Assembly: GCA_004431415.1 (NCBI GenBank)
Contig: QPMI01000461.1
Span: forward strand, 1-64,000
DNA from: Cyanophora paradoxa CCMP329
Lineage: Eukaryota > Plantae > Glaucophyta
Direction of reading: 5' to 3'
DNA length: 64,000 bases
The notes under the pieces are model-generated. The model saw nothing but the letters and a program-made list of their open reading frames with translations, was not told where the DNA came from and ran no database searches. The position numbers and the translations under genes are program-made. The first letter of the stretch is position 1. Each line of letters begins with the position of its first letter. Positions 8,748 through 23,587 of the stretch are shown piece by piece.

Positions 8748-9383
8748 CTAGTCAAGCTCTATCACTGCGTCCGGATCCGCCAGGAAAGGTACATGCTCGA
8801 CGGCCGGATCAACTGTATTCCTCGTAATGTAAAACAGATCATCCGGGGATGGCCCCTGCGCCCTTGACGCCTGTGCACGCGCACCCGTGAATTCGCGAGA
8901 TCCGCAGCAGAAATCACCGTACGTATACGACGCAAAGATCGCTTGCACCAACGACTGGAAGGTTCGGCTTGCTGGGTCGTACCAATGCACCGCCAGAGTG
9001 CCGCGGTCATCCACATGCGTACTGCAGTGCAGCTCCAAGAACGCCAGGTCCAGTAGCTCGCTCTTCCACGCATTCGAGTCCGAAGCACGGATCGTGACTC
9101 GCACAGGCCCTGCGCATGCGCTGTTGAGATCACGGCACACTAGCAGAAGCAACGATGCAACCGGGCATGCACCTGTCATTGAAGTGACGCGTAGCGGGGC
9201 AGGCCGGCAGTCGCCGAGAACGCGCACCTCGACAGTTTTAGAGCTGCCCTCGTTCTCGGGCACCTGCTTCTTTGACGGGTCGGGCTCCGGCTCTGACTTC
9301 CGCTTTCTTGAAGCTTTGGTAGGCATTTTCTTCTGAGGAATCGATCCGTTGTACTTTCGCGCCTTTTGTTTTGTCTTCGCCAT
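8748..9383 (-). CDS. H3-tail-mimic / putative ubiquitin-like domain protein, copy A
   Basis: N-terminus MAKTKQKARKYNG...TKASRK versus H3 ARTKQTARKSTG...TKAARK; family core VEVRVLGDCRP...GPVRVTI...WYDPASRTF...GPSPDDLFY; GT-AG intron 9110-9172. Confidence 0.75.
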   Translation of the reverse strand: MAKTKQKARKYNGSIPQKKMPTKASRKRKSEPEPDPSKKQVPENEGSSKTVEVRVLGDCRPAPLRVTSMTGACPVASLLLLVCRDLNSACAGPVRVTIRASDSNAWKSELLDLAFLELHCSTHVDDRGTLAVHWYDPASRTFQSLVQAIFASYTYGDFCCGSREFTGARAQASRAQGPSPDDLFYITRNTVDPAVEHVPFLADPDAVIELD

Positions 9384-9875
9384 TAGAGCGAGCGCGCCTC
9401 GAAACTTCCGAGAGTCGCTAGATCCTGTCGGAAAACTGGAAACTGGGGAGTCGCGCTCCTCGAGCTCGCGCCGCGCTGCCTTGTGCAGACGCTAGATTGC
9501 TGGATCTTGGTCTCGTCCGGGACGGCCCGGACGGCCCGGGATGGGACTAGTGGGGGTACACGTGCGCTCAATGCCGCCAGCAAGTCTCGAAGCTTTCAGG
9601 CGGTGACCGGTGGTCGGAGATCGAGCTAGAGCGCGTAAAACAGCTAGCCGGAGGCTTAGCCATCGCCGGCAGCCTCGCTGACGTGGACTCGGGCGCCGCG
9701 TGGCCTGTCATGATCAACGGCGCTGAACGTTGAACGTTGATAGATATAGCCGTCGACTTCGGCATTCGTGAATGTGCACGCCCGCTTCGTGCTCTGCCTT
9801 TACAGTTCGCCGCTGGAACTCATGCGGGCTTGTTCCCCTGCAGGCCTAGGTCGTCCGTTCTCCGGATCCTCGCAG

Positions 9876-10651
9876 ATGGCCTCCGCGAAGGCAGCGAAGC
9901 GCCGGCGGGATATGCAATGTGATGATTCAGATCCGAAGCCCTCTCCTGTAGTTTTAAAGAAGCGCATACGGCGGCAAAGACAGCTGCAGTGTGGTGACCC
10001 AGAGCCCTCTTCTGAGTTGGAGGAGCTGGGCACAGTCAAGGCGCGGCCGAAGATCGTTAGCGCAGATCTAGTTCGGCATCAGCTCAGCTTCAGCTGCAGC
10101 CGGGATTTGTGGCTGTCATCGAGCGCAATCGAGAGCGCGCTCGTTTGCATCCGCGCGGCGGCGGCCAAGGAGGCAGTCACACAGAATTGGTTCATCGCAC
10201 ATCCGCTCGCCCTCCACGACGCTGAATCCTACATAGAAGCGTTACTCGAGCACTTGAATGGCACCAGCACACGCGCTCTCGTCCCCGTCAACAACCGACG
10301 ACACTGGACACTCTTGGTTATCGACGGCAAGGTCTGCAGATACTACGACAGCATTGGCGCGAAGGCTCCGCGCAAGCTCGCAAGAATTCTCTTGAAACAT
10401 GAAATTGACGTCATCCAATCGGTACAGCGAGCAGTGCAGCATGACGGCCATCAGGTTAGTGCTGTTTTCACTCCCGCCCGTGGCCAGTGGCAACGGCTGA
10501 CCACGCTCGCTAGTGCGGGATCTGGTTGCTGGACTTCGCAGAGCGCGAAATGCGAGGCAACCCTCTAGATCTAGATTTAGATGGAGACTACATAGAGCGC
10601 CGTAGGAGAGAATTTGAGGCGCTCGTGTTGCACTACAGCGCTGGCAATTAG
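9876..10651 (+). CDS. Ulp1/SENP-family (C48) cysteine protease, two exons
   Basis: LVPVNNRRHWTLLVID...YYDSIG...VQHDGHQ; removing a 59-nt GT-AG intron (10455-10513, with a CTGAC branch point) gives CGIWLLDFA, completing the H-D-Q-C catalytic set; stop at 10651. Confidence 0.85.
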
Positions 10652-10750
10652 GCGCTCCTGTTGTATCCGTGCCGCCGCGTATACGTATAATACATCCGCG
10701 TATTTTTGGCTACGAAATCCGGACTAGGGAAGGGATGCCGGCACTTGCAA

Positions 10751-11383
10751 CTATTCCTGATTGATCGCCAGGAAAGGTACATGCTCGACTTCCGGGATGA
10801 TATCCCTCCTCGCGACGTAATACAGATCTCCCGGGGATGGCCCCGGACTCGACGCCTGTGCACGCGCACCCGTGAATTCGCGAGATCCGCATCAGAAATC
10901 ACCGTAAGACGCAACAATCGCTTGCACCGGAAGCTCGAAGTACCAGCCTGCTTGGTCGTACCGAGATCGATACAGCACCAGCTCCTCGAGGTGCACATGC
11001 GTACTGCAGTGCAGCTCCTCGAACGCCAGGTCCAGTAGCTCGCTCTTCCACGCATTCGAGTCCGAAGCACGGATCGTGACTCGCACAGGCCCTGCGCATG
11101 CGCTGTTGAGTTCACGGCACACTGGCAGAGCAACGGTGAATCGGTGTACATTTGCACCTGTCATTGCAGTGACGCGTAGCGGGGCAGGCCGGCAGTCGCC
11201 GAGAATGTGTACGTCAACAAAGCTGCCTTCGTTCTCGGGCCGCGGTCGTGGCGCGTAAAGAGCATTCAGTGCTTCCGACTCCGCGACCTGCTCCGCTGTC
11301 GGCGGCCGCGGCCGCTGTGCGAGGTTCTTTCGAGGAGCTTTTCCGCCTGTAGACATACGCGCTCTCTCTTTCACTTTCGCCAT
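10751..11383 (-). CDS. H3-tail-mimic / putative ubiquitin-like domain protein, copy B, carrying K9M
   Basis: MAKVKERARMSTGGKAPRKNLA aligns without gaps to H3 residues 1-21, with Met at position 9 (codon 11354-11356); same core and two introns as the paralogues; ends PEVEHVPFLAINQE*. Confidence 0.8.
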
Positions 11384-21290: not shown

Positions 21291-21468
21291 CGGCGGCACC
21301 CGGCGGTCGGAGAACTAGCTAGAGCACGCGATCTAGCTAGCTAGAGGCTTTAGCACCGCCGGCTACCTCGGCGGCGCTCGGTCTGAGCGTTCGGTACGCG
21401 GCCATCGGTCTCGAGCTCGAGACCACCAACTTGGCGCTCGTAGTTCGTTTGTAAAGTAGCTGAGATCG

Positions 21469-22117
21469 ATGCTTACCGCATGGGGAAAACGTATTCGAAA
21501 ACAGCTCGTTACTTCACGGAAGCCGCGGTCGGCGCCACCAGTACCAGAGCCAACAGAAGAGCAGGTCGCCGAGTCGGAAGCGCTGATTGCTCTGTACGCG
21601 CCGCGATCGCGGCTCGAGAACGCGGGCAGCTCTGTCGAGGTGCGCGTTCTCGGGGACTGCCGGCCCTTCCGGTGGGCATCACTGATATGACAGGTGCGAC
21701 CACGGTTGCATCGATGCCTTAAGCTTGTGCCCTAATCTAAACAGCGCAGGGCCTGTTAGATTGAAGATCTATGTTTCAGAGACGTGGCAGACAGATCTTC
21801 TGGAGGCTGCGTACCGTGAACTCGTCCGCAGCACATACCACGCGCACCCTGATGCGCTGATGATGTATCGATACGACCCAGCAAGTCGGTGCTTCATTTA
21901 CCTCGAGTTCTTTGCCGAGTACTTCGAGCCGGTGCAAGATATCTTTCCGTCTTCCCTCGATTTCTGATCATGATGCGGCATTCGCGAATTCACGCTTGCG
22001 CGTGCACAGAGGTCGAGTCCAGGGCCATCCCCGGATGATCTGTACTACGTCGCGAGGGATTCGGTGATCCCAGAAGTCGAGCACGCGCCCTTCCTGGCGA
22101 CCGTTTTCGGATCCTAG
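21469..22117 (+). CDS. H3-tail-mimic / putative ubiquitin-like domain protein, copy F (possibly frameshifted)
   Basis: GKRIRKQLVTSRKPRSAP followed by the family core; the frame breaks near 21665-21690. Confidence 0.55.
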
Positions 22118-22509
22118 CTATTGCCCGTTTCAAGGCCCCTAGCGGCCCGACAGCTGCATCTTATTCGAAGTCGTGGCCGCCGGCGCCATGCACGCTATAG
22201 CTAGCCGCTGAGCGGAACAGAGATTCGAATTCGTCTGCGCAGAGATTGCTGTATTTTTCTTAATTCGAATCCTTTGCCGCAAATGAGCGTATCGGCCTTG
22301 GGACAACGCTGCCGCGGAGCGCTAGCGGTCGCATAAATCGAAGAGTTCGAATTCTCTAGAGAGCCATGTATGCGAAAACCACTAGAGAATATACATGCTG
22401 GTCGAATTCGTATTCGAGACGAAGCCGGCGCCGTACGCGTAGTGCATCAGGAATAATGAAGCTAGCTAGCACTATACGTCGCCATTGAGCGGATGTTTTC
22501 CAGAGCAAT

Positions 22510-23587
22510 CATGGCTCGCATTCGCGACAGGTAGTTCGAGGCCTGCGCTCGTTCTCCGGATCCCCGCGGGAACTGGTCGCCCGCGAGGTAGAAGAAATCA
22601 CCCGGTGATGGTCCCTGAGGTTTCGATGTCTGTGCACATGCACGCGCACGCGTGAATTCGCGGATCCGGAAGCCGCATCAGAAATCATCGTCAGACGCAA
22701 AGAAAGCTTGCACCGGCCGCTCGAATCCACTGGTTTCTGGGTTGAACCAATACAGCGCTACATTGTTTTTCGGTACGAGAAACTCGCTGCACGCCCGCGC
22801 CAGCAGCGCGTCCGGCCACGACCCCGAATCCGGATCATTGACTTGCACAAGATCTGCACAGGCCCATTAATTCTGTAAGAAATGTCTCTGAAACGGGATA
22901 AATGGGCACCTGACATAATTCTCCAATCGTCCGCTACAACATGCACCGCTACGGAGCTGTTTCCTTCATTAATATTCTCGACTGGTGGCGTCGCGCGCAG
23001 ACAAAGGAGTCCGCGCGTGTCGAGCGGTGGCGGCACGAGCGAAGTTATATCTAGAGCATCGCTGTTCTGCGTCGCTGCCGTCGCTGGTGCCTTTGAGAAA
23101 CGGGCGGCCAATCTTGCCAGGTATCGTGCGGGCTCCGCTCCCGGCGGAAATTGGTCGCCCGTGAGGTAGAAGAGATCGCCTGGAGATGGTCCCTGTGGTT
23201 TCGATGTCTGTGCGCATGCACGCGCACGCGTGAATTCGCGGAAGCCGCATCAGAAATCATCGTCAGACGCAAGGAACTTTCGCACCGGCCGCTCGAATCC
23301 ATTGGTTTCTGGGTTGTACCAATACAGCGCTACATTGGATTTGGGCACGAAATACTCACGGCACACATCGGCCACTAACGCTTCCGGCCACGACTCCGAA
23401 ACATTGATCGTGAATCGCACAGCCATGCCTCGCACAGGAACTGCACAGGGGTTTTCTATGGTATGGCATCCTGGTCGCAAAAGCGACAAGTACCTTGCGT
23501 CTCTTCAGGGTCCTGGATGCCCCACGGGTAGTACCGCAAGTCCGCGAAAACGCTCACCTCGACGGAGCGGTTTGGCTCCGCCGACAT
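22510..23587 (-). CDS. Diverged paralogue with two tandem copies of the family domain and no H3 tail, copy G
   Basis: MSAEPNRSVEVSVFADLRY...VRFTINVSESWPEALVADVCREY...VALYWYNPETNGFERP, with a second copy NSSVAVHVVADD...NVALYWFNPETSGFERP; same intron positions. Confidence 0.55.

What the first reader, a model, noticed from the sequence alone, without database searches (positions are those of the whole stretch)
8748..23587. Expanded family fusing different histone H3 tail fragments to a conserved ~100-aa domain
Seen: seven loci here plus a deleted copy at 63590-63877 share two introns and a spliced core. Their N-termini sample different H3 windows: A residues ~1-27 (AKTKQKARK..TKASRK), B 1-21 with K9M, C 18-32, D 14-22, E 14-28 (KVPRKQLATKAARKS), F degenerate, G none. 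Inference: a diversifying set of decoys for readers and writers of K4, K9, K14/18 and K27. I know of no described family with this architecture.
Basis: partly seen in the sequence, partly recalled or inferred. Interest (0 to 1): 0.88.

Follow-up and report, generated by a model that had tools for sequence, protein, structure and literature searches.

The report
Histone-tail mimics on ubiquitin-like domains
A probable glaucophyte alga carries a cluster of small genes that attach differently trimmed copies of the histone H3 tail, one with a natural K9M change, to a ubiquitin-like fold, and these may act as decoys or adaptors for chromatin enzymes, though no function or expression has been shown.

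Summary
A–E are intact three-exon genes (163–169 aa). F has a 1-nt frameshift. G is one tail-less gene with two tandem domains. H is a deleted pseudogene. The tails of A–E match only histone H3 among PDB chains: B E=1.6e-5, E 2e-4, A 0.007, C and D weak. K9M in B is real. The tails are not independent samples: they overlap on H3 14–27, all six keep K18, and they share derived changes, so one capture was followed by trimming. Tail pN/pS is about 0.56. The core models as a beta-grasp (ubiquitin-like) fold; the PDB fold hits are consistent but individually weak. Its only homologue among 1.84 billion representatives is a tail-less Cyanophora paradoxa protein, which supports both introns. Best reading: nuclear H3-tail mimics on a variable interaction domain (0.5). 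Rivals: the tail is only a borrowed import signal (0.27), or the cluster is decaying (0.13). Intron 2 is unusually conserved and frame-preserving; this is unexplained. I found no described family with this architecture.

The parts
8748..9383 (-). Gene A: exons 9383-9173, 9109-8949, 8870-8748; tail H3 1-27; both introns in frame and open
9876..10651 (+). Neighbour: Ulp1/C48-like cysteine protease gene (intron 10455-10513), His-Asp-Gln-Cys motifs intact, 237 aa; link to the family unproven
   Evidence: weak Pfam Peptidase_C48, E=0.022 on exon piece
10751..11383 (-). Gene B: exons 11383-11158, 11091-10928, 10855-10751; tail H3 1-21 with Met at position 9
14385..14506 (+). Repeated upstream module, also at 17712-17803, 21180-21304 and 23859-23984, with a partial match at 9552-9677; probably a bidirectional promoter (inference)
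14606..15237 (+). Gene C: exons 14606-14837, 14891-15054, 15127-15237; tail H3 18-29/32
15565..16205 (+). Gene D: exons 15565-15811, 15871-16025, 16098-16205; tail H3 14-32, diverged at 23-26
17841..18470 (+). Gene E: exons 17841-18066, 18133-18290, 18363-18470; tail H3 14-28, 14/15 identical
18291..18362 (+). Intron 2 (shown for E; 72-84 nt in all eight domain copies): highly conserved, always a multiple of 3, carries an in-frame TGA that overlaps the branch-point-like motif (TGC in A; two TGA in F)
21469..22117 (+). Gene F: tail H3 13-27 lacking 23-24; 1-nt frameshift in exon 1, probable pseudogene or assembly error
22462..23587 (-). Gene G: five exons (23587-23494, 23440-23286, 23207-22910, 22853-22714, 22629-22462), two tandem domains, no H3 tail, 284 aa
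23665..24165 (+). Duplicate of the F upstream region and first codons only (stub)
63590..63877 (-). Pseudogene H: H3 1-4 then exon 1; deletion from intron 1 into exon 3 (junction near 63652); stop codon in the exon 3 remnant

Best explanation
An H3 gene's tail-coding sequence (at least residues 1-32) was captured once onto the first exon of a glaucophyte gene for a small beta-grasp domain. The fusion duplicated locally, exchanged sequence by gene conversion, and lost different parts of the tail. The products are small non-nucleosomal proteins. Inferred working: the tail carries them into the nucleus and is bound by H3-tail readers, writers or erasers, mainly around K14-K27 (K4 and K9/K9M only in A and B). 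The beta-grasp domain, whose middle exon diverges fastest, binds a partner. Each paralogue would thus titrate or re-target a chromatin enzyme. B may inhibit a K9 methyltransferase. Shown: gene structures, H3 similarity, common descent, moderate constraint, predicted fold class, Cyanophora homologue. Inferred: expression, localisation, all binding, any effect on chromatin.
For: Tails match only H3. E keeps 14/15 residues and B 12/15 over 7-21, including non-basic ones, while tail synonymous sites differ at about 0.6; pN/pS 0.56 (0.38-0.81) in A-E. Exon 3 dN/dS 0.55 (0.32-0.88); exon-1 core 0.54 and exon 2 0.81, both intervals include 1. A-E and G splice to open frames, while intron 1 gaps are multiples of 3 in only 4/37 cases. 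Two AlphaFold2 models give strand-strand-helix-strand-strand-strand, and the top PDB Foldseek hits are beta-grasp domains (RA/RBD, FERM, PB1, DIX, RAWUL, USP7 UBL). The C. paradoxa homologue lacks the tail, so the tail is the added part. Precedents: PAF15 (PMC7060239), H3 N-terminal mimics (PMC8166343), K9M trapping of Clr4 (PMC8167812).
Against: No transcript, protein or binding data. F and H are broken and a stub exists. The tail register was set by hand, which lowers pN, and pairs are not independent. R2 is Lys in A and B, against a PHD-reader rule (PMC8166343). A has lost S10, T11 and K14. The Met-9 codon may owe its survival to use as a start codon: D begins at an ATG that could be the same codon with a short deletion, and B and D share a derived motif at 23-26. 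No Foldseek hit has E below 0.01; model pLDDT is 53 and 67.
Confidence: 0.5

Rival explanations
1. The H3 tail is only a borrowed nuclear import signal or basic patch; the function lies in the beta-grasp domain and the tail differences are drift.
For: The shared window 14-27 coincides with the importin-binding segment 11-27, with K14 and K23 as anchors (PMC7752055). Tails are 23-41% Lys+Arg and several changes add basic residues. The homologue has a basic N-terminus unrelated to H3. G manages without a tail.
Against: Non-basic H3 residues are kept exactly in B (10-16) and E (19-22, 24-25, 28) despite synonymous divergence near 0.6. K18 is invariant although it is not one of the two Kap123 anchors. 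Importin grooves also read non-basic residues, so this does not exclude the rival.
Confidence: 0.27
2. A silent, decaying duplication cluster: the tail is a relic of an old capture and the copies have no present function.
For: F frameshift, H deletion and stop, an F-like stub; exon 2 dN/dS near 1; conversion tracts up to 90 identical nt can homogenise dead copies; a Maverick-type element lies next door; 21% of C. paradoxa genes are methylated and mostly silent (PMC12344493).
Against: Six genes keep open spliced frames and all splice sites across about 35% nucleotide divergence in exon 2, while neighbouring non-coding DNA has mostly frame-breaking gaps. Exon 3 and tail ratios are below 1.
Confidence: 0.13
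3. The fusion imitates a ubiquitylated H3 tail (K14ub, K18ub or K23ub) and so binds DNMT1-RFTS-type or SUV39/Clr4-type enzymes; B would be a K9M plus K14ub-like trap.
For: K18 is kept in 6/6 tails, K14 in 4, K23 in 3; the partner domain is beta-grasp; K9M and K14ub act together on Clr4 (PMC8167812); DNMT1 reads ubiquitylated H3 and PAF15 (PMC7060239); C. paradoxa has DNMT1 and repressive CpG methylation (PMC12344493).
Against: No sequence similarity to ubiquitin; fold hits lean to RA/RBD-type domains, not ubiquitin; the domain is joined at the end of the tail through a 25-30 residue linker, not at a lysine; an RFTS domain in the host DNMT1 was not checked.
Confidence: 0.1
4. Side question, independent of the above: 'intron 2' is partly coding, and its TGA is read as selenocysteine or read through.
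For: All eight lengths are multiples of 3; about four independent indels are all 6 nt against roughly 20% in-frame gaps in other non-coding DNA; A has TGC at the TGA; divergence is 0.14 against 0.29 in intron 1; C. paradoxa has most of the Sec machinery (PMC6627142).
Against: Invariant G|GT and GCACAG ends; no AG in the 40-50 nt before the acceptor; the TGA is part of the same branch-like motif seen in intron 1 and in the protease intron; no codon-position bias (11/9/11); no SECIS-like pattern or Rfam hit; the homologue has about the spliced length, though it is a predicted model; most of the segment has pLDDT below 50.
Confidence: 0.12

Closest known systems
H3-tail mimics such as PAF15/PCLAF and H3 N-terminal mimicry proteins
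   Same: A non-histone protein carries an H3-tail-like segment that H3 readers could bind (PMC7060239, PMC8166343).
   Different: Here the tail is 12-27 residues long and appears copied from H3 itself; it is a multi-copy family with differently trimmed tails fused to one beta-grasp domain; R2 is not kept.
EZHIP and K-to-M oncohistones (H3K9M)
   Same: B has Met at the K9 position inside intact H3 flanks and keeps K14.
   Different: EZHIP mimics K27M; the K9M in the studies cited is a mutation in nucleosomal H3 (PMC8167812). B has no histone fold and its inhibition is untested.
Cyanophora paradoxa tig00000157_g9696.t1 (P0002)
   Same: Homologous domain over all three exons (profile E 8e-4 in 1.84 billion; exon 2 alone hhalign 94.7%).
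   Different: No H3 tail; 667 aa with a C-terminal right-handed beta-helix; no close paralogues found.
Integral beta-grasp interaction domains (RA/RBD, PB1, RAWUL, USP7 UBL)
   Same: Predicted topology and top fold hits.
   Different: No sequence-level match; best Foldseek E 0.016; no subfamily can be assigned.

Membership tests
Histone H3 variant | Histone-fold domain after the tail | tested here: not met
   No Pfam histone hit; models are mixed beta/alpha
Histone H3 variant | H3-like N-terminal tail | tested here: met
   (strong for B and E, moderate for A, weak for C and D)
H3 N-terminal mimicry proteins (PMC8166343) | Removable initiator Met and Lys at position 4 | tested here: met
   A, B and H start Met-Ala with Lys at 4; Met removal is predicted, not shown; C-F lack this segment
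H3 N-terminal mimicry proteins (PMC8166343) | Arg at position 2 | tested here: not met
   Lys at 2 in A, B and H
H3 N-terminal mimicry proteins (PMC8166343) | Binding to PHD or Tudor readers | not testable with these tools
   needs binding assays
K-to-M methyltransferase inhibitors (EZHIP-like) | Met at the target Lys within conserved substrate flanks | tested here: met
   B only: residues 7-8 and 10-18 identical to H3
K-to-M methyltransferase inhibitors (EZHIP-like) | Inhibition of the SET enzyme | not testable with these tools
   needs enzyme assay
Ubiquitin-like superfamily (beta-grasp) | Beta-grasp topology | tested here: inconclusive
   Order of elements fits and top PDB hits are beta-grasp in two models, but E>0.01, best TM about 0.5, pLDDT 53 and 67
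Conjugatable ubiquitin-like modifiers | C-terminal di-glycine after the last strand | tested here: not met
   No Gly-Gly at the C-terminus of any copy
PAF15-type DNMT1 recruiters | UHRF1-dependent ubiquitylation of two tail lysines | not testable with these tools
   needs biochemistry; host UHRF1 and RFTS not examined
Selenoproteins | In-frame UGA aligned with Cys in a homologue | tested here: inconclusive
   True only if intron 2 is retained
Selenoproteins | SECIS element in the 3' UTR | tested here: not met
   No Rfam match; simple pattern scan negative in 7/7 downstream regions

The most novel reading that the evidence does not exclude
A genome-encoded family of mimics of ubiquitylated H3 tails, in which the beta-grasp domain stands in for ubiquitin. 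Paralogues would titrate the DNA and K9 methylation machinery, and B would be a natural K9M plus K14ub-like trap for a SUV39-type enzyme, tuning the silencing of repeats and endogenous viruses.
Probability: 0.1. Interest if true: 0.92.

Novelty: new variant of a known kind. Interest (0 to 1): 0.72.

Why it matters
The known H3 mimics I could check (PAF15, the H3 N-terminal mimics, EZHIP) are single proteins. An expanded family that captured the real H3 tail, trimmed it in several ways and kept a natural K9M would be a new way for a genome to regulate its own chromatin enzymes, in the least-studied branch of the plant lineage. It would offer a natural test of whether free tails can titrate readers and writers, and whether a K9M peptide outside the nucleosome inhibits a K9 methyltransferase. 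If the tail is only an import signal, it remains a clear case of a histone tail reused by exon capture.

Tried and rejected
Searches with no result: A's natural ORF against 5.8 billion proteins; the profile with P0002 added; P0002's domain found only itself; exact look-up of 20 window ORFs; viral, metagenome and prokaryote contig scans; Pfam, PHROGs and PDB sequence searches of the core; viral fold library; Rfam and tRNA scans. P0001 was rejected: it is a tandem-repeat ORF matching 32 profile positions seven times. Independent captures of different H3 windows were rejected because the tails share derived residues and DNA. A histone variant and a conjugatable ubiquitin-like modifier were rejected (no histone fold, no di-Gly). 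A conserved hairpin in intron 2 is not supported: covariation term 0.22, weak and inconsistent folds. A five-residue H3-like word inside the neighbouring protease (about 10362) is treated as chance. Maverick cargo was rejected: all copies lie outside the terminal repeats. Literature searches for a tail-fusion family found nothing matching; the library lacks most subscription papers.
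Full report
VERDICT. The feature is real and appears undescribed: a local family of small three-exon genes joining trimmed H3 tails to a probable beta-grasp domain. The decoy function is plausible but unproven.

METHOD NOTE. Searches used exon pieces, the natural uninterrupted ORFs of A and B, or the database protein P0002, all by reference. That joined step is left out. Joined translations were made only inside scripts, to check reading frames and once for a tblastn against this window itself.

GENE STRUCTURES. Self-comparison finds six similar loci between 8748 and 22117, two more distant domain copies at 22462-23587 and a partial copy at 63590-63877. 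Two GT-AG introns lie at the same positions in all eight domain copies. A-E splice to 164, 164, 168, 169 and 163 aa. F has one base too few in exon 1. G is a single 284-aa gene with two domains and no tail. H has lost the region from intron 1 into exon 3 and has a stop. Intron 1 is secure: its lengths vary freely (53-66 nt), 33 of 37 pairwise gaps break frame, and the homologue P0002 has a 21-residue gap exactly over it.

INTRON 2. It is probably a true intron: invariant splice ends, a branch-like motif, no AG before the acceptor, no codon-position bias, about the right spliced length against P0002, and low model confidence over most of it. Yet it is oddly conserved (0.14 differences per site against 0.29 for intron 1), always a multiple of 3, and holds an in-frame TGA that is TGC in A. 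No SECIS-like element was found. I leave about 0.12 for read-through and list the conservation as unexplained.

THE TAILS. Against all PDB sequences the tails of A-E hit only H3: B E=1.6e-5, E 2.3e-4, A 0.007, C 0.24, D 0.37. F gives no hit but fits the register 13-27 by eye and shares DNA with E (p=0.001) and C (p=0.009). In register, K18 is kept in all six, K27 in five, K14 in four, K23 in three, K4 in A, B and H, K9 in A, and Met9 in B. A, C and F share Ser at 25, B and D share a derived motif at 23-26, and A, B and H share Lys at 2. This pattern indicates one capture of at least residues 1-32 followed by truncations and internal deletions. Tail pN/pS among A-E is 0.56 (bootstrap 0.38-0.81). 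The hand-set register and non-independent pairs make this moderate evidence only.

THE DOMAIN. A profile search of 1.84 billion representatives returns one real relative, P0002, which is Cyanophora paradoxa tig00000157_g9696.t1. It carries the domain at its N-terminus, a beta-helix at its C-terminus and no H3 tail. Exon 2 alone matches it at 94.7% probability. Models of A's natural ORF (pLDDT 53) and of the P0002 domain (pLDDT 67) both show two strands, a helix and three strands. Their top PDB fold hits are beta-grasp domains, none with E below 0.01. There is no C-terminal di-glycine. dN/dS is 0.54 in the exon-1 core, 0.81 in exon 2 and 0.55 in exon 3; only exon 3 excludes 1. Closest pairs change along the gene, with identical tracts of 90 nt (A-B), 67 (C-D) and 54 (D-E), which points to gene conversion.

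HOST AND CONTEXT. The homologue and the short introns point to a glaucophyte near Cyanophora (inference). It is probably not the sequenced C. paradoxa strain: host GC here is about 49-62% against 67.6% (PMC6704402), and no gene models of these loci turned up in the protein searches. An intact-looking Ulp1-type protease gene lies between A and B. A Maverick/Polinton-type element of about 27.7 kb with 1103-nt terminal repeats and a 6-nt target duplication separates the cluster from H. No family member lies inside it.

MECHANISM. Best supported (0.5): nuclear H3-tail mimics on a variable interaction domain that titrate or re-target chromatin proteins, centred on K14-K27, with B a candidate K9 methyltransferase inhibitor. 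The main argument is exact retention of non-basic H3 residues in B and E while synonymous sites drifted. Rival 1 (0.27): the tail is only an import signal, since H3 11-27 is the importin-binding segment (PMC7752055). Rival 2 (0.13): a decaying silent cluster. Rival 3 (0.10): mimicry of ubiquitylated H3, suggested by K18 invariance, the fold class, K9M/K14ub synergy on Clr4 (PMC8167812) and DNMT1 reading of ubiquitylated H3 and PAF15 (PMC7060239), but weakened by the lack of any ubiquitin sequence similarity. A caution on K9M: D's start codon may be the same codon, so the change could have been kept as an alternative start. Every binding and functional step is inferred.

COMPARISON AND NOVELTY. 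It may work like known H3 mimics and, for B, like K-to-M inhibitors. It is not a histone variant, not a conjugatable ubiquitin-like modifier, and fails the Arg2 rule of the H3 N-terminal mimic class. A broad survey of chromatin-gene fusions (10.1101/2021.11.30.470311) showed no such family in the passages retrieved, and my paper searches found none; this is absence in a partial library. I rate it a new variant of a known kind (histone mimic), interest 0.72.

Noticed in passing
window 28950-56638: Endogenous Maverick/Polinton-type element of an alga: 1103-nt terminal inverted repeats (99.9% identical), 6-nt target duplication, A32 packaging ATPase, primase-helicase, weak integrase match, patatin lipase, adenine methyltransferase, SAM decarboxylase, and probable polymerase and capsid ORFs. 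Looks recent.
   Followed up: partly
window 9876-10651 (+): Ulp1/C48-like protease gene with intact catalytic motifs, between two genes with predicted ubiquitin-like folds; any functional link is untested.
   Followed up: partly
intron 2 of all copies, e.g. window 18291-18362: More conserved than exon 2 and intron 1, frame-preserving, in-frame TGA (TGC in A); branch-like motif about 40 nt from the acceptor against about 18-24 nt in other introns. Unexplained.
   Followed up: partly
window 293, 9552, 14453, 17759, 21251, 23931, 59127: A G-rich motif recurs, mostly within a longer module between divergently oriented genes; promoter element or small mobile element.
   Followed up: no
window 15565-15600: D's tail recalls, from memory only, the sequence around K24 of animal PAF15; not tested.
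   Followed up: no
window 12126-12778: Tandem array of about 103-nt units, roughly six copies, 89-93% identical.
   Followed up: no
host parts of the window: Palindromic hexamers are enriched (938 observed, 581 expected from base composition), and several indels in the family are 6-nt palindromic duplications.
   Followed up: partly
window 1548-3585 and 60521-63296: F-box-like and leucine-rich-repeat-like ORFs (weak Pfam F-box and LRR hits for 1548-2555), resembling from memory expanded Cyanophora families.
   Followed up: no
L001 (ENA ERZ26693861 contig): Several long ORFs built of a tandem repeat of about 70 aa; a spurious profile hit, identity unknown.
   Followed up: no
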